64,000 nt of DNA. Origin: Dendrobates tinctorius. Lineage: Eukaryota. Where the stretch lies: contig NW_027361709.1 in NCBI RefSeq assembly GCF_039654945.1, positions 6,448,001 to 6,512,000 of the forward strand. The letters are read 5' to 3'. Below the pieces are notes generated by a model. That model was not told the origin of the DNA, made no database searches, and worked only from the letters and a program-made list of their open reading frames with translations. Positions 17,392 to 44,520 of this stretch are shown here, one piece after another. The translations under genes and the position numbers were made by a program. Positions within the stretch are counted from its first letter, which is position 1, and each line of letters starts with the position of its first letter.

Positions 17392-17961
17392 ATGTCTCTG
17401 GAGCTGGAGGAGAATGTGCCCAGCACTGAGGAGGAGGAGGATGGGGAGGAGGAGGAGAGCCCCGCAGGGAAGAGGAGCTCCAGGAGGAAGCAGCCGGCCG
17501 CAGCCTCCTCGGGGGCCTCCAAGAGGAAGAAGAAGAAGAACCAGCCGGGCCGCTACAGCCAGCTGGTGGTGGACACCATCCGCAGCCTGGGCGAGCGCAG
17601 CGGCTCCTCCCTGGCCAAGATCTACGGCGAGGCCAAGAAGGTGTCCTGGTTCGACCAGCAGAACGGCCGCACCTACCTGAAGTACTCGGTGAAGGCGCTG
17701 GTGCAGAACGACACCCTGCTGCAGGTGAAGGGCCAGGGGGCCAACGGCTCCTTCCGCCTCAACAAGAAGAAGCTGGAGGGCGGCGGCGGGAGCCCCCCGG
17801 AGAGGAGGAAGGCGGCACCGGCCAGGAGGACTACAAGTGCCAGCAGCGCCGCCAAGAAAAGCCACAAGAAAGCCAAGAAGGAGAAGCCCAAGAAGAGCAG
17901 CAAGAAAAAGGCGGCGGGGAGCAAGAAGGCGAGGAAGAAGCCCAAAGCCAGGAAGGCGTGA
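17392..17961 (+). CDS. h1-10: Linker histone H1.10 (H1x), canonical-type copy A, 189 aa, intronless
   Basis: MSLELEE start (human H1x MSVELEE) and the diagnostic H1x globular domain [29 protein letters not shown]...[38 protein letters not shown]. Lys-rich tail; syntenic with HMCES/COPG1. Confidence 0.95.
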
Positions 17962-18019
17962 GAGGCCGAGCACCGAGCAGAGACCGAGGGGACCGTGGGG
18001 CCGCAGGAGAAGGACCGCG

Positions 18020-19100
18020 CGCTCCTCCTCCTCTTTCCTTATTTTTCCTCTCCCTTCTTTTCTTCCTCTTTCCTCTTCTTTATCTTTTTCCTCCTCCTCC
18101 CCTGTCTTCCTCCTCCTTCTCCTCGGGACCTTTCCTTCTTTTGTAGATTTTCTCTTGCTCTTTACACTTTATAATTTTATCTTTTCTGTATTTTGTGTTT
18201 GGTGATTTTTTATGCTTTTTTTTTTTTAAAGTTGTATAAACCTTTGTGATAATTTGTTTATGAGGAATAATTGCATTTCTATAGCGCCGACATGAGATCA
18301 TGAGAGCAAACAATGAGAATGTTGTGCGCCAGAAGCACTTAAAGGGGTTGTCTGGTGAAAAGCAGGTTCTGAGAGGTGAACAGGTCCTGTTGGGGGGCAC
18401 TGAGCAGGTGGCTTGTATATACTCGTGTTTGTGCAATGATGTGATCATGTCCTGAGAGATGGAGCCCGGACACAACGACCTGAGGCCGGACACAGCAGCC
18501 CGGAGCCGCTGCCGGGACACAATGTATCCGCCATCATTCTGCTCGGAACTTTGACACGATCTGCACCACTCGATTGGCTGGAGAGAAGCTGTCACCCTAG
18601 CAACAGCGTTCCAGGTGCGTGGCCTCAGTGACAGCTGGGATGGGGCAGGAGGAGCTGCAGGACAGTGACAGCTCAGTGCTTCTCCTCCGTCTTCTTTTTC
18701 GCTTCCTTCTCCTCTTTCCTCTTCTACTCTTCTTTTCCTCCTCTTTCTTTTTACTTTTCTCCACTTTCTTCCTCTTCTCCTTTTCGCCATCTCCTCCTTC
18801 TCTTTCCTCTTCATCTCTTTGCTCTTCTTTTCCTCCTTCTTTTTCTTCTCTTTCCTCTTCTCCCATCTTCTTTTCCTCCTCCTCCTTTTCCTTCTTGTTT
18901 TTCTCCTCCTCCCCTGTCTTCTTCTCCATCTCCTCCTTCTCATCTCCTTCTCTTTGCTCTTCTTTTCCTCCTTTTTCTTCTCTCTTCTCCTCCCATCTTC
19001 TTCTTTTCCTCCTCCTTCTCTTTGCTCTTCTTCTTCTCCTCCTCCTTCTCGTTTCTCTCCTCCTCCCCTGTCTTCCTCCTCCTCCTCTTTTTCTCCTTGG
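18020..19100. repeat. Polypyrimidine (CTT/CCT) low-complexity tracts downstream of H1-10 copy A
   Basis: Near-pure C/T tracts at about 18020-18125 and 18680-19100. Confidence 0.85.
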
Positions 19101-19322
19101 GACCTTTCCTTCCTTTTGTAGATTTTCTCTTGCGCTTTATTTTGCACTTTATAATTTTATCTTTTCTGTATTTTGTGGTTGGTGATTTTTTTTTATGCTA
19201 AATGTAAAAAAAACAAGTTGTATAAACCTTTGTGATATTTTGTTTATGAGTAATAATTGCATTTCTATAGCGCCGACATATGAGAGCAAACAATGAGAAT
19301 GTTGTGCGCCAGAAACACTTAA

Positions 19323-19583
19323 AGGGGTTGTCTGGTGAAAAGCAGGTTCTGAGAGGTGATCAGTCCTGTAGGGTGGGGGGTGCCGACCCCTGGGACCCTC
19401 GCTGAGGCGCAGATCAGGCGCTTGTATCTCTGTAACAGTGGAGCACGCTCCTTCGTTCCACCTCACACTCCATTTTGTATCAGGTACAATCATTTGCCGA
19501 TCAGCGCCGGTCCCAACTGCTGGACACGACCAGTCGATAAGTGATCACCTATCCCCCAGATAAGTGATAACTTTGAGACCCCT
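19323..19583. mobile_element. TTAA-targeting MITE (T2/Kolobok-like); one example of several similar ends in the window
   Basis: ttaa|AGGGGTTGTC ... GAGACCCCT|ataa with internal imperfect palindromes. Confidence 0.5.
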
Positions 19584-19749
19584 ATAAAGCGCCACTGGCA
19601 TTTTTTATTTTTTTCCCCACCGAAGTAGCGCTTCTAAGTCCCCAGCCCCCCAGTCTAATACTCACCCGCCACCATCTTCATATTCGATCAGCACCGCTGG
19701 AGTCAGACTTCAGTAGTTAGTGACCTACCGGAGGACACGTATCTCTGCA

Positions 19750-41595: not shown

Positions 41596-42429
41596 AGGCC
41601 AACTATAAGATGCTCACCCCTTGCTGCAGATGTTACGTGCAGTGACTGTGCTCATACATTCTGTTACTTATCTTGCGCAGTTTTGGGGGTGCACATTAGT
41701 ACAATTGCTCGGGATCAGTCCATTATTCTTCATCTCTAAGGTGCTAACACTTTGTATCGGGGACGTCGGTGCAGTGCGGTCCCGCAGGGAGTCGGTGTTG
41801 GGCTGTGGGACATCACAGTAGACCGTCCCCCTCCGTACAGTATTGGGGTGATTGTACATACAGACCCCCATCTCCGTTTCCGGACCACACTGCAGAGAGA
41901 TGAAAATCATCCCTGATAGATCACACACAAAAATAATAAAATTCACATTTTTTGAGCTCATGCAGCGTCACCAATATACATAGCCGCGGCCCCTCCTACA
42001 GGTTCTGCCCCCAAAAAACACATGACCCCCCCACACTCCAGTATAAAAGCAGTTCTGACATTACACGTAGTGTAGAAAGGGTTAAGCAGCGATGTCCGGG
42101 ACAAGGTTCCATCCTGACAACCTGGAGAAACATTACAACACAGCACAACATGTGAACCCTAAGAACACGACGAGCGACCACAACCGGAACTAAGGGGAAA
42201 ACCTCTAAAAGGTGCGGAGCATGGAGAAACCAGAACCATTAACCCTACGTGAACACAGCAGAGAGCGGTGCCGAGGGGCGAGCTCTTTACCCCCCATGCC
42301 AGCAAAAAAATTAGCTCCAAAGGGGCCGATACGGAAACCGGGGCCACAAAGAACCACGAGGGCCAAATGTAGAGTGTAAGCCCACTGCACTCCGAGAAGA
42401 ACCCCTGGAAACTGAGGGGCAGACAGGAG

Positions 42430-43650
42430 CGAACCCCTGCGGGACCGTATGCGGGGGCAGGGGTTAACCCCTGCGGGACCGTATGCGGGGGCAGGGGTTA
42501 ACCCCTGCGGGACCGTATGCGGGGGCAGGGGTTAACCCCTGCGGGACCGTATGCGGGGGCAGGGGTTAACCCCTGCGGGACCGTATGCGGGGGCAGGGGT
42601 TAACCCCTGCGGGACCGTATGCGGGGGTTAACCCCTGCGGGACCGTATGCGGGGGTTAACCCCTGCGGGACCGTATGCGGGGGTTAACCCCTGCGGGACC
42701 GTATGCGGGGGCAGGGGTTAACCCCTGCGGGACCGTATGCGGGGGCAGGGGTTAACCCCTGCGGGACCGTATGCGGGGGCAGGGGTTAACCCCTGCGGGA
42801 CCGTATGCGGGGGCAGGGGTTAACCCCTGCGGGACCGTATGCGGGGGCAGGAGCTAACCCCTGCGGGGCCACATGGGGGGGCAGGAGTTAACCCCTGCGG
42901 CACCACATGGGGGGGCAGGAGCTAACCCCTGCGGGACAGTATGCAGGGGCATGAGTTAACCCCCGCGGGACCGTATGGGGGGGTAGGAGCTAACCCCTGC
43001 GGGACAGTATGGGGGGGATCAGGACAGGAGTTAACCCCTGCTGGACCGTATGGGGAGGTGGGAGTTAACCCCTGCTGGACATTATGGGGGGGGTCAGGAC
43101 AGGAGTTAACCCGTCGGACAGTATGGGCGGGGCCAGGACAGGGGTTAACCCCTGCAGGTCTGTACAGGGAGCCAAGACAGGAATTAACCCCTGCAGGACA
43201 GTATAGGGGCCAGGAGAGGAATTAAACCCTGTAGGACAGTATGGTGGGGCAAGACAGGAGTTAACCCCTGCAGGTCTGTACAGGGAGCGAGGACAGGAAT
43301 TAACCCCTGTGAGACAGTACGGAGGGGCAGGACAGGAGTTAACCCCTGTAGGACAGTATGTGGGGCAGGACAGGAGTTAACCCCTGCAGGTCAGTAGGGG
43401 GCAGGACAGGAGTTAACCCCAGTTGGACTGTACAGAGTCAGGACAGGAGTTAACCCCTGCGGGACAGTATGAGGGGACAGGAGTTAACCCCTGCGGGACA
43501 GTATGAGGGGGCAGGACAGGAGTTAACCCCTGAGGGACAGTATGGGGGGGGCAGGACAGGCGTTATCCCCTGCAGGACAGTATAGGGGGCAGGACAGGCG
43601 TTAACCCCTGCAGGATAGCATGGGGGCAGGGCTGAAGTTAACCCCTGCAG
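42430..43650. repeat. 34-bp GC-rich minisatellite with palindrome GCAGGGGTTAACCCCTGC
   Basis: Homogeneous copies at about 42430-42850 degrade into diverged copies towards 43650. Confidence 0.93.
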
Positions 43651-43928
43651 GACTGCACTCTGTACCCCAGTCTATACAGAGGATTGTGGAGGTAAAATCT
43701 GCAATAATGAATATTAACCCTTGAAGGATGTCAGACCGCCCCACCAATAGTGGAGATGGGGGTAATACTGGACACAGCATTGGTGGAGCTTAGGATCGAC
43801 ACCAGATTGATCGCTGCGCTGATCTATGGCCGACGATCCCCTCTCCCGGAGCAGACTCTGGTGCTGGGCTGGGGGTCCCTCGCTCCCCGGGCTCTGTGCT
43901 GGGCTGGGGGTCCCTCGCTCCCCGGCGC

Positions 43929-44309
43929 TCACTTCTTGGAGCTCTGCGTCTTCTTGGGCAGCAGCACGGCCTGGATGTTGGGCAGCACGCCCCCCTGGGC
44001 GATGGTCACCCCTCCCAGCAGCTTGTTGAGCTCCTCGTCGTTGCGGATCGCCAGCTGCAGGTGCCGCGGGATGATGCGCGTCTTCTTGTTGTCCCGCGCC
44101 GCGTTCCCCGCCAGCTCCAGGATCTCCGCGGACAGGTACTCCAGCACGGCGGCCAGGTACACGGGGGCGCCGGCCCCGACCCGCTCCGCGTAATTCCCCT
44201 TCCGGAGCAGCCGGTGGACGCGGCCTACTGGGAACTGCAGCCCGGCCCTGGAGGAGCGGGACTTGGCCTTGGCCCGGGCTTTTCCGCCGGATTTCCCTCG
44301 TCCTGACAT
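43929..44309 (-). CDS. Solitary histone H2A variant, 126 aa, short C-tail (KKTQSSKK)
   Basis: [126 protein letters not shown]. The ATG is in accATG context. There is no SQEY (H2A.X) or SQKTK (H2A.J) end. Confidence 0.95.
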
Positions 44310-44464
44310 GGTCAACACCTGCAGCCGGGGACAGAAGACGCGTTAGCGCCGGTTCCCGGGAGCAGCGCCGGGCGCGGGGGCCGGGTATGACGTACCGTGG
44401 TAGGTAGCGCGTTACACGGGATCACCTGCGGGAGCTCTGCCCTCCGCCACAGCCAGCGCCGCAC

Positions 44465-44520
44465 TGACGTCAAGCCCCGCCCACTCCGGCCTAGCCTACA
44501 GCGCTGAACACTCGGATTGG
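44465..44520 (-). promoter_or_regulatory. H2A promoter elements: CRE, GC box, CCAAT
   Basis: TGACGTCA at 44465-44472, CCCCGCCC at about 44475-44482 and ATTGG at 44516-44520, within a CpG-rich region with no obvious TATA. Confidence 0.6.

What the first reader, a model, noticed from the sequence alone, without database searches (positions are those of the whole stretch)
17392..44520. Compact cluster of replication-independent histones: two tail-divergent H1x genes plus an orphan H2A beside HMCES
Seen: three intact histone ORFs in about 27 kb, each in a GC-rich promoter context, none followed by the replication-dependent stem-loop, and no H2B/H3/H4 partners in the window. Known: human has COPG1-HMCES in tandem with a single convergent H1-10, the same relative arrangement as here. 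Inference: H1 copy B and the H2A are extra genes in this conserved block. They may form a co-regulated chromatin module, for example germline/sperm, erythroid or post-mitotic, that I do not recognise as named.
Basis: partly seen in the sequence, partly recalled or inferred. Interest (0 to 1): 0.85.

Follow-up and report, generated by a model that had tools for sequence, protein, structure and literature searches.

The report
Conserved frog H1x pair plus H2A
This frog region carries three real, intact, non-S-phase-type histone genes (two H1x linker histones and one H2A) that public genomes already annotate and that sit in the same place in other amphibians, and the H2A also in birds and reptiles. 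It is therefore an old conserved block, and the new points are that the two H1x genes keep an identical core by copying from each other and that the H2A seems misnamed "H2A.J".

Summary
H1x-A (17392-17961, +), H1x-B (35622-36158, +) and an H2A (44309-43929, -) are intact. None has a histone 3' stem-loop. They lie between RAB7A and HMCES/COPG1. The N gap (32296-32798) sits in intergenic repeats and touches no gene. Gap-free assemblies of two other frogs show the same order.

- **The H2A.** The exact 126-aa protein is encoded at the same position, HMCES > H2A > < H1.10, in birds, a turtle, a lizard and an alligator. Other frogs differ by 1 aa. Xenopus calls it h2aj, and its protein was reported in egg chromatin. 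It fails the H2A.J hallmarks and synteny, so the name looks like a misnomer.
- **H1x-B.** It is the "H1.10-like" paralog annotated across frogs.

My main addition concerns the globular-domain DNA of A and B. It differs at 0, 2 and 8 of 237 nt within three species, but at 17-28 nt between species. The N-tails group by paralog instead. This indicates recurrent gene conversion confined to the globular domain.

I found no support for a co-regulated module.

The parts
3305..3816 (+). RAB7A coding exons (context, left border of the block)
   Evidence: ORF translations read as Rab7. A Ras/Roc-family gene lies in the same position beside H1x-A in Leptodactylus and Nanorana, and beside H1.10 in a bird, pike and eel.
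17158..17368 (+). 29-nt x 7.3 tandem array directly upstream of the H1x-A ATG (5'UTR or promoter)
   Evidence: TRF reports 98% matches. The array has no counterpart upstream of H1x-B in the alignment. The H1-box-like AAACACA lies at -321, just upstream of the array.
17392..17961 (+). H1x-A: ortholog of H1-10 / H1.10, with an acidic N-tail and no SPKK motif
   Evidence: The N-terminus is of the MSLELEE type seen in the amniote H1.10 proteins fetched. The N-tail has 12 acidic residues. N-tail DNA is 65-78% identical to A copies of other frogs and 37-55% to B copies.
17530..17780 (+). 251-nt tract in H1x-A identical to the H1x-B tract (globular domain)
   Evidence: It is the longest exact shared run. 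The flanks fall at once to 33-46% ungapped identity. GC3 of the globular domain is 1.00.
32296..32798 (.). Assembly gap (two N runs around a 59-nt microsatellite), intergenic
   Evidence: No gene of the finding touches it.
35622..36158 (+). H1x-B: amphibian 'H1.10-like' paralog with a short basic N-tail and four SPKK motifs in the C-tail
   Evidence: It is 66-72% identical over full length to 'H1.10-like' proteins of E. coqui and Ranitomeya. In four other frog assemblies a linker histone lies next to the H2A. In three of them its length matches the B-type protein (171, 175 and 178 aa). The X. laevis one runs off the locus and was not typed.
35673..35923 (+). 251-nt tract in H1x-B identical to the H1x-A tract
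35991..36102 (+). 42-nt x 2.7 internal tandem duplication in the H1x-B C-tail, carrying three of its four SPKK motifs
   Evidence: TRF reports 92% matches. SPKK motifs start at residues 125, 139, 146 and 153. The last three fall inside the array; the first lies just upstream of it.
36548..36553 (+). AATAAA, the likely polyadenylation signal of H1x-B, 390 nt after the stop
   Evidence: RNA-like runs hold 59-75% of the words of 35300-36600.
43929..44309 (-). HMCES-linked replication-independent H2A (126 aa), ortholog of Xenopus h2aj and sauropsid 'histone H2A'
44319..44425 (-). Predicted 107-nt intron in the H2A 5'UTR (GT at 44425-44424, AG at 44320-44319)
   Evidence: Read. The CAG acceptor is invariant in 8 frogs. 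A pyrimidine tract, a CTAA branch-like motif and a GTGATCC donor are conserved in most of them. The alligator gene model is also spliced upstream of the ATG: 668 nt for 192 aa. No reads confirmed it.
44426..44520 (-). H2A first exon and core promoter: CCAAT (44520-44516), GC box (about 44482), CRE TGACGTCA (44472-44465)
   Evidence: The CCAAT and GC box are conserved in the frog alignment.
47987..51062 (-). HMCES coding exons (start codon ORF 50820-51062, C-terminal ORF 47987-48157)
   Evidence: ORF translations. An SRAP-domain gene lies in the same place in 16 of the 19 ortholog loci with a gene list.
61678..63568 (-). COPG1 coding exons (right border of the block)
   Evidence: ORF translations. 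A gene with Adaptin_N and COP-gamma platform domains lies upstream of HMCES in bird loci.

Best explanation
The window is the frog version of an old vertebrate block. Its order is RAB7A > H1x-A > H1x-B > < H2A < HMCES < COPG1. All three histone genes are replication-independent 'replacement' genes.

**How they are expressed.**
- Each has its own promoter and none has a 3' stem-loop.
- The H2A has a conserved short 5'UTR intron.
- H1x-B has an AATAAA signal.
- I infer that they make polyadenylated mRNAs that supply histone outside S phase. The Xenopus protein data suggest this includes the maternal store.

**The H2A.** It is a distinct gene that has sat at this position since before amphibians and sauropsids split. 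It is under extreme purifying selection. It was not found in the one mammal locus and two teleost loci examined. It is not the ortholog of mammalian H2A.J, despite its Xenopus name.

**The two H1x genes.** They are an old amphibian duplicate pair. Recurrent gene conversion confined to the globular domain keeps the nucleosome-binding module the same, and identical in this species. The tails evolve separately. H1x-A has an acidic N-tail and no CDK-type sites. H1x-B has a short basic N-tail and four SPKK sites, three of them in a 42-nt internal duplication. I infer one DNA- and nucleosome-binding core with two differently regulated sets of tails.

**The clustering.** I read it as historical synteny, not a shared regulatory unit.

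**Shown:** the gene structures, synteny, conservation and conversion pattern. **Inferred:** polyadenylation, splicing, timing of expression and the functions of the tails.
For: **Intact domains and no stem-loop.**. Seven ortholog loci also lack Rfam Histone3.

**Synteny.**
- Alligator and kiwi have SRAP > H2A > < an approximately 220-aa gene.
- Eight further bird-type loci, a turtle and a lizard have COPG1 > HMCES > H2A > < H1.10, and one bird locus also shows < RAB7A.
- Frogs have HMCES > H2A > < H1x-B and RAB7A > H1x-A > H1x-B.
- A caecilian has H1x > < H2A.

**Selection on the H2A.** Frog and sauropsid orthologs differ at 29-65 of 381 nt but at 0-1 aa.

**Difference from canonical frog H2A.** Seven substitutions and a tail 4 aa shorter.

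**Not H2A.J.**
- The protein has Ala11 and a TQ motif instead of Val11 and SQK.
- Mammalian H2AJ sits beside H4C16, between WBP11, SMCO3 and ART4 (PMC9526256).

**Gene conversion.**
- A 251-nt exact run has random-level flanks.
- A and B differ at 0, 2 and 8 of 237 nt within species, against 17-28 nt between species.
- N-tail DNA groups by paralog.
- Derived residues are shared by both paralogs in Leptodactylus, and the globular proteins are identical in Hyperolius, Pelobates and Microcaecilia.

**Transcription hints.**
- Small RNA-like runs of the same organism, from several studies, hold 59-75% of the H1x-B stretch and 43-85% of the H2A stretch.
- h2aj.L is listed by mass spectrometry in Xenopus egg-extract nucleosomes.

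**Splice signals.** They are conserved in 8 frogs.
Against: - Splicing, polyA sites and expression of each copy in this species are therefore indirect. Many of the runs are typed only 'RNA?' or '?'.
- H1x-A has no canonical AATAAA or ATTAAA within 2.5 kb of its stop. Its expression was not tested.
- The H2A 3' flank is a palindromic 34-nt satellite. Run words from there may come from other copies of that repeat.
- The mass-spectrometry assignment to h2aj could rest on peptides shared with other H2As.
- Absence in mammals rests on one species, with only +/-10 kb around H1-10 and HMCES outside the locus. Absence in fish rests on two teleosts.
- Ranid frogs show 4-5 aa differences between the A and B globular domains, so conversion is episodic, not universal.
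- The age of the duplication is read from low-complexity tails only. C-tail identities do not separate the paralogs cleanly.
Confidence: 0.8

Rival explanations
1. The three genes form a co-regulated chromatin module for a special cell state, such as germline, erythroid or post-mitotic cells.
For: Adjacency has been kept for hundreds of millions of years. Runs X16 and X12 hold both the H1x-B and the H2A stretches. h2aj.L is listed in Xenopus egg chromatin.
Against: H2A and H1x-B converge and are 7.8 kb apart, so they share no promoter. The promoter motif sets differ. Sauropsids keep H2A and H1.10 without a second H1x. Teleosts keep H1.10 without the H2A. Two broadly expressed genes appearing in the same runs says little. 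Conserved synteny of small genes between large neighbours needs no functional link.
Confidence: 0.12
2. The 251-nt identity, or the whole second H1x copy, is an assembly or polishing artefact linked to the nearby gap.
For: There is an N gap between the copies. The best DNA runs are from the sample the window may come from, so they are not independent. Exact identity with razor-sharp borders can arise when short reads are mis-assigned during polishing.
Against: The same two-gene layout is present in gap-free Engystomops and Leptodactylus assemblies, and both paralogs lie on one Nanorana scaffold. Those species show near-identity of the same domain: 2 and 8 differences of 237 nt, against 17-28 nt between species. 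The tails of A and B are each orthologous to the corresponding paralog elsewhere. Independent RNA-like runs hold most of the H1x-B stretch.
Confidence: 0.05
3. The H2A is the true ortholog of mammalian H2A.J, as its Xenopus name says.
For: NCBI and Xenbase name it H2A.J histone. Like H2AJ, it lacks a stem-loop, is a near-canonical H2A, and has an S/T-Q motif in the tail.
Against: It has Ala11, whereas canonical frog H2A has Val11, and its tail is TQ[ST]SKK, not SQK. The H2A.J hallmarks are A11V and a C-terminal SQ. Mammalian H2AJ neighbours H4C16, WBP11, SMCO3 and ART4, and those genes border the large histone cluster in chicken. That is not the HMCES / H1-10 neighbourhood.
Confidence: 0.08
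4. The H2A is a stray ('orphon') replication-dependent H2A copy, or a decaying one.
For: It is 92-96% identical to canonical H2As.
Against: It has no stem-loop here or in the 7 ortholog loci scanned. It has a conserved 5'UTR intron and promoter. Amino-acid change is 0-1 against 29-65 nt changes between frogs and sauropsids.
Confidence: 0.03

Closest known systems
Xenopus h2aj (H2A.J histone L homeolog, Q6INC9_XENLA) and the sauropsid 'histone H2A' genes beside HMCES
   Same: It is the same gene by position (HMCES > H2A > < H1x) and by sequence. It is identical to the bird, turtle, lizard and alligator protein and differs by 1 aa from the Xenopus and other frog proteins. None of the scanned orthologs has a stem-loop.
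   Different: This frog has Ser at residue 123, as sauropsids do. The seven other frog loci have Thr. Otherwise there is no difference, so this is a plain ortholog.
Mammalian H2A.J (H2AJ)
   Same: It is a replication-independent H2A with no stem-loop that does not form a clade of its own apart from bulk H2A. Its tail carries an S/T-Q motif.
   Different: Residue 11 is Ala, not Val. The tail is TQSSKK, not ...SQKTKSK, and the protein has 126 aa. The genomic neighbourhood is different: HMCES / H1x against H4C16, WBP11, SMCO3 and ART4.
H1.10 / H1x (H1-10), the replication-independent linker histone
   Same: H1x-A has the same N-terminal start motif, globular domain and position between RAB7A and HMCES, convergent with HMCES. 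Neither H1x gene has a stem-loop.
   Different: Amphibians carry a second copy, H1x-B, with a short basic N-tail and an SPKK-rich C-tail. Frog H1x-A has an expanded acidic run. The globular domains of the two copies are homogenised within species.
Domain-restricted concerted evolution by gene conversion between tandem paralogs (a general phenomenon, known from my own knowledge in many gene families)
   Same: Paralogs group by species in one segment and by paralog elsewhere. The tract borders are sharp and GC3 in the tract is very high.
   Different: I found no paper in the held library describing it for H1x. The tract matches the folded domain almost exactly, and the disordered tails escape conversion.

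Membership tests
Replication-dependent (canonical) histone genes | 3' stem-loop (Rfam Histone3) in place of polyadenylation | tested here: not met
   No match at gathering score or at E <= 1 in the three 3' flanks. The consensus pattern with 2 mismatches had 0 matches.
Replication-dependent (canonical) histone genes | Clustered with H2B, H3 and H4 genes | tested here: not met
   No such ORF appears in the window's ORF lists. This was by inspection.
H1.10 / H1x | Linker-histone globular domain closest to H1.10 proteins | tested here: met
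   Pfam PF00538 matches both copies. The best hits of H1x-B are all H1.10, H1x or 'H1.10-like'. H1x-A was not searched on its own, but it shares the identical globular domain.
H1.10 / H1x | Position between RAB7A and HMCES, convergent with HMCES | tested here: met
H1.10 / H1x | N-terminal MS-V/L-ELEE motif of tetrapod H1.10 | tested here: met
   H1x-A has it. H1x-B does not: it starts MAQ-EVAPATP, like all frog B copies. H1x-B is therefore a paralog and not the one-to-one ortholog.
H1.10 / H1x | Polyadenylated mRNA | tested here: inconclusive
   H1x-B has AATAAA 390 nt after its stop. H1x-A has no canonical hexamer within 2.5 kb. No reads were laid.
Mammalian H2A.J | Val11 (A11V relative to bulk H2A) | tested here: not met
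   The protein has Ala11. Canonical frog H2As have Val11.
Mammalian H2A.J | C-terminal SQ(K) motif | tested here: not met
   The tail is TQSSKK. It has a TQ motif but no SQK.
Mammalian H2A.J | Gene beside H4C16, flanked by WBP11, SMCO3 and ART4 | tested here: not met
   Here and in 19 ortholog loci with a gene list the neighbours are HMCES or COPG1 and H1x. The H2AJ neighbourhood is taken from PMC9526256.
Mammalian H2A.J | No stem-loop, polyadenylated only | tested here: inconclusive
   Stem-loop absence is shown. Polyadenylation is not shown.
HMCES-linked tetrapod H2A (Xenopus h2aj orthogroup) | 126-aa protein identical or 1 aa different, placed between HMCES and H1x on the HMCES strand | tested here: met
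HMCES-linked tetrapod H2A (Xenopus h2aj orthogroup) | Short intron just upstream of the start codon | tested here: inconclusive
   Splice signals are conserved in 8 frogs, and the alligator model is spliced. There is no read evidence for this species.

The most novel reading that the evidence does not exclude
Two things that databases annotate only under borrowed names may be undescribed biology.

1. The HMCES-linked H2A may be a separate replication-independent H2A lineage. It would date from at least the tetrapod ancestor, be frozen at 0-1 aa change between frogs and birds, carry its own short TQ-containing tail, and be lost in mammals. It would not be H2A.J.
2. Amphibians may run a 'one core, two tail sets' H1x system. 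Gene conversion confined to the globular domain would keep the nucleosome-binding module the same. An acidic-N-tail form and a CDK-site-rich form would be free to specialise.
Probability: 0.5. Interest if true: 0.55.

Novelty: new member of a known kind. Interest (0 to 1): 0.38.

Why it matters
For this genome the result is plain annotation: three orthologs of already annotated replication-independent histone genes.

More widely, it flags a probable naming error. Non-mammalian "h2aj" does not look like H2A.J, and this could mislead work in Xenopus egg extracts, where the protein is listed among nucleosomal histones.

It also points to a strongly conserved H2A that mammals seem to lack. Finally, it offers a clean natural example of gene conversion confined to a folded domain while the disordered tails diverge. 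That is useful for asking what H1 tails do when the globular domain is held constant.

Tried and rejected
**Read laying.** The call covered 41300-44800 with four RNA-like runs. I therefore have no read-level evidence for splicing, 3' ends or variants.
- Later calls worked beside them: 44307-44580, 42300-43935 and 44310-44809.
- A local tandem-repeat scan of 15000-45000 did span them. It searches nothing outside the window.
- I did not search papers for the tail peptide, for the same reason.

**The look-up of sequencing runs.** It failed once as busy and was repeated.

**Fish and mammal contexts.**
- Pike, conger eel and snow leopard showed no H2A gene and no tblastn remnant.
- The mammal locus does not reach HMCES.

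**Pleurodeles context.** Uninformative: the genome is very large and no DNA was returned.

**Literature searches.**
- I searched for an amphibian H1x paralog, for H1x gene conversion and for non-mammalian h2aj.
- They returned only the mass-spectrometry table and nomenclature papers.
- 'H1X' in older Xenopus papers means B4 / H1.8, not H1.10.

**C-tail DNA identities.** They do not separate the paralogs cleanly because the tails are low-complexity, so I rely on the N-tails.

**Permissive Rfam hits in the 3' flanks.** All are far below gathering score. They are hairpins of a palindromic satellite, and I rejected them as chance.

**Not used.** Structure prediction and fold search were not used because the families are unambiguous by sequence.

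Full report
**1. What is there**

The window holds three intact histone ORFs.
- H1x-A lies at 17392-17961 (+) and encodes 189 aa.
- H1x-B ends at 36158 (+). Its ORF opens at a GTG, but the ATG at 35622 gives a 178-aa protein whose start matches all frog orthologs.
- The H2A runs from the ATG at 44309 to the stop at 43929 (-) and encodes 126 aa.
- Pfam assigns Linker_histone to both H1 proteins, and Histone plus Histone_H2A_C to the third.

The flanking ORFs identify the neighbours.
- RAB7A exons lie on the plus strand at 3305-3816.
- HMCES exons lie on the minus strand from 51062 to 47987.
- COPG1 exons lie on the minus strand at 61678-63568.

The order is therefore RAB7A > H1x-A > H1x-B > < H2A < HMCES < COPG1.

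No other histone-like ORF was seen in the ORF lists. This was by inspection.

**2. The gap**

The N runs (32296-32459 and 32519-32798) enclose a TG-rich microsatellite and abut a 24-nt tandem array.
- They are intergenic: 14.3 kb after H1x-A and 2.8 kb before H1x-B.
- No reading frame depends on them. Only the spacing between A and B is uncertain.
- Gap-free assemblies of Engystomops (A and B 6.8 kb apart) and Leptodactylus (13.5 kb apart) show the same order and strands.

**3. Replication-independent character**

No histone stem-loop was found by any of these tests:
- Rfam at gathering score over the whole window;
- Rfam at E <= 1 in each 3' flank;
- the consensus pattern with two mismatches;
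- Rfam over seven ortholog loci from a frog, Xenopus, birds, a lizard, a turtle and an alligator.

Other features fit the same reading.
- H1x-B has an AATAAA 390 nt after its stop. H1x-A has no canonical hexamer within 2.5 kb.
- Directly upstream of the H2A ATG there is a CAG acceptor (44321-44319), a pyrimidine tract, a CTAAC branch-like motif and a GT donor at 44425-44424. Together they predict a 107-nt 5'UTR intron.
- In an alignment of eight frogs the CAG is invariant. The CCAAT box and the GC-box core are also invariant, and the donor GTGATCC is shared by several species.
- The alligator gene model spans 668 nt for 192 aa, so it is also spliced just upstream.
- The N-terminal extensions in sauropsid and caecilian models are unrelated to each other. 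I read them as upstream-ATG artefacts, so the real protein starts at MSGRGK.

**4. Expression**

I could not lay reads.

The remaining evidence is indirect.
- Small, RNA-like runs of the same organism from several studies hold 59-75% of the sampled words of 35300-36600 (H1x-B). They hold 43-85% of the words of 43000-44480 (H2A).
- Two runs (X16, X12) hold both stretches.
- Many of these runs are typed only 'RNA?' or '?'.
- The H2A 3' flank is a repeat, so these figures are hints and not measurements.
- In Xenopus, a proteomics table lists h2aj.L among nucleosomal histones of egg-extract fractions (PMC12092007). Shared peptides could blur that assignment.

**5. The H2A is an old, known gene**

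The exact 126-aa sequence is in the protein collection in 335 blocks.
- Ten places read back all show it just downstream of an SRAP-domain gene (HMCES). Most also show COPG1 upstream and a convergent H1.10 of about 218 aa downstream.
- One bird locus also shows RAB7A.
- By matching contig lengths, the set includes a turtle (Emydura) and a lizard (Podarcis).
- Alligator and kiwi show the same arrangement.
- The Xenopus and other frog version differs by one residue. It is named H2A.J histone L homeolog / Q6INC9.
- It lies downstream of HMCES in seven frog assemblies. In four of them a convergent linker histone lies next to it within the locus. In three the length matches the B-type protein, and the X. 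laevis one is cut off.
- A caecilian has a 125-aa H2A convergent with an H1x.

Between frogs and sauropsids the coding DNA differs at 29-65 of 381 positions, but the protein differs at 0-1. This is very strong purifying selection. It also rules out contamination.

Against canonical frog H2A the protein has seven substitutions and a tail four residues shorter.

Two teleosts lack it.
- Conger eel has RAB7A > H1.10 > < HMCES, with 1.8 kb between the last two and no H2A-like remnant.
- Pike has H1.10 followed by ARPC4.

In snow leopard there is no H2A gene or remnant within 10 kb of H1-10. That locus does not reach HMCES, so the mammalian absence is provisional. From my own knowledge, no H2A gene is annotated there in human.

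**6. It is probably not H2A.J**

- Reviews give the H2A.J hallmarks as A11V and a C-terminal SQ site, and call it mammalian (PMC8015243).
- The nomenclature paper places H2AJ beside H4C16, between WBP11, SMCO3 and ART4. Those genes border the large histone cluster in chicken (PMC9526256).
- The gene here has Ala11, while frog canonical H2As have Val11. Its tail is TQSSKK, and it lies in a different neighbourhood.

The Xenopus name therefore looks like a best-hit transfer. The conserved TQ could be a kinase site of the S/T-Q type. That is speculation.

**7. The two H1x genes**

H1x-A has the N-terminal start motif of amniote H1.10 followed by an acidic run (12 acidic residues). It has no S/T-P-x-K site.

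H1x-B has a short basic N-tail and four SPKK sites. Three of them lie in a 42-nt x 2.7 tandem duplication at 35991-36102.

Both types occur on one contig in many species.
- This holds for the ranoid frogs, hyloid frogs and spadefoot toad (Spea) listed. It is read from matching contig lengths.
- Pelobates shows both types, but in two different species.
- A newt has an analogous pair, and a caecilian has two copies.
- For Ascaphus, Bombina, Discoglossus and Rhinophrynus only a B-like protein was listed. Their state is open.

NCBI labels the B copies 'histone H1.10-like'. I found no paper on the pair in the held library.

**8. Gene conversion**

In the window, A and B share an exact 251-nt run (17530-17780 = 35673-35923). 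Its flanks drop at once to 33-46% ungapped identity.

Differences over the 237-nt globular coding segment:

| Comparison | nt differences |
|---|---|
| A vs B, this species | 0 |
| A vs B, Leptodactylus | 2 |
| A vs B, Engystomops | 8 |
| Same paralog, between species | 17-28 |

N-tail DNA shows the reverse pattern.

| Comparison | % identity |
|---|---|
| A vs A | 65-78 |
| B vs B | 59-74 |
| A vs B | 37-55 |

Protein comparisons extend the picture.
- Both Leptodactylus copies share the derived Pro and Gln.
- Both copies here share two derived Ser residues.
- In Hyperolius and the caecilian Microcaecilia the two copies have identical globular domains. So do the A copy of Pelobates fuscus and the B copy of P. 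cultripes.
- Ranids differ at 4-5 residues, so conversion is episodic.
- GC3 of the tract is 1.00 here. That fits GC-biased conversion, although H1.10 is GC-rich in general.

The same pattern in independent assemblies makes a polishing artefact unlikely.

**9. Co-regulation**

H2A and H1x-B converge and are 7.8 kb apart, so they share no promoter. The upstream motif content differs.

| Gene | CCAAT | GC box | CRE | TATA | H1-box-like AAACACA | CpG o/e |
|---|---|---|---|---|---|---|
| H2A | 3 | yes | yes | no | no | 1.0 |
| H1x-B | 1 (at -457) | yes | no | -46 | -112 | 0.77 |
| H1x-A | 0 | yes | no | no | -321, just before the 29-nt array | 0.48 |

These are simple motif matches, but they give no hint of a common control. 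The block is kept with one H1x in sauropsids and without the H2A in teleosts. I therefore read the adjacency as inherited synteny.

**10. Verdict**

- The features are real and correctly located.
- The reading of extra, unnamed genes forming a module is mostly not borne out. The genes are annotated orthologs in an old block.
- The useful additions are the domain-restricted concerted evolution of the H1x pair and the case that non-mammalian 'h2aj' is a separate, highly conserved H2A lineage.
- Three earlier first-reader notes on this same window agree with what I measured: the 251-bp identity, the 5'UTR intron and the 42-nt duplication.
- Other notes place replication-dependent histone clusters elsewhere in this genome. 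I did not check them.

Noticed in passing
window 4057-5097 (-) and 58560-59600 (-): Two intact 346-aa Tc1/mariner-type transposase ORFs that differ at only a few residues. One lies just after the RAB7A exons noted and the other lies between the HMCES and COPG1 exons. They look like a recently active element.
   Followed up: no
window 24019-25094 (+): A Tc1-like transposase split into two overlapping ORFs (208 and 180 aa), so it is broken. It lies between H1x-A and H1x-B.
   Followed up: no
window 17158-17368: A 29-nt x 7.3 tandem array (98% matches) lies immediately upstream of the H1x-A start codon. It has no counterpart upstream of H1x-B. It lies between the H1-box-like motif at -321 and the ATG.
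   Followed up: partly
window 42432-43653: A 34-nt satellite of about 40 copies fills the H2A 3' flank. Each unit holds a perfect 16-nt palindrome (CAGGGGTTAACCCCTG on the gene strand). It gives only chance-level miRNA-like Rfam hits and no histone stem-loop. Whether it is part of the 3'UTR is unknown.
   Followed up: partly
window 19751-21560, 26602-30571, 40525-41598, 9900-11600: Large tandem arrays fill the intergenic space: 43 nt x 42, 34 nt x 117 and 86 nt x 12.8. A repetitive GC-rich, low-complexity stretch follows the RAB7A exons.
   Followed up: no
window 18220-18290 and 36420-36490: The 3'UTRs of H1x-A and H1x-B cannot otherwise be aligned, but they share a T-rich stretch of about 60 nt at roughly 75% identity. 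It may be a relic of the duplication or a conserved 3'-end element.
   Followed up: no
window 32230-32295: A GC-rich stretch ends in ATG...CAG|GTGAG (a start codon plus a donor-like site) right at the left edge of the assembly gap. It could be an unannotated first exon, or chance.
   Followed up: no
L004 (Xenopus laevis, CM004473.1): In this X. laevis chromosome no HMCES gene is called in the 10 kb between the end of COPG1 and h2aj, unlike in the other frogs. This may be a homeolog-specific loss or an annotation gap.
   Followed up: no
window 43929-44309 versus L003-L010: This frog's H2A has Ser at residue 123, as birds and reptiles do. All seven other frog loci read have Thr.
   Followed up: partly
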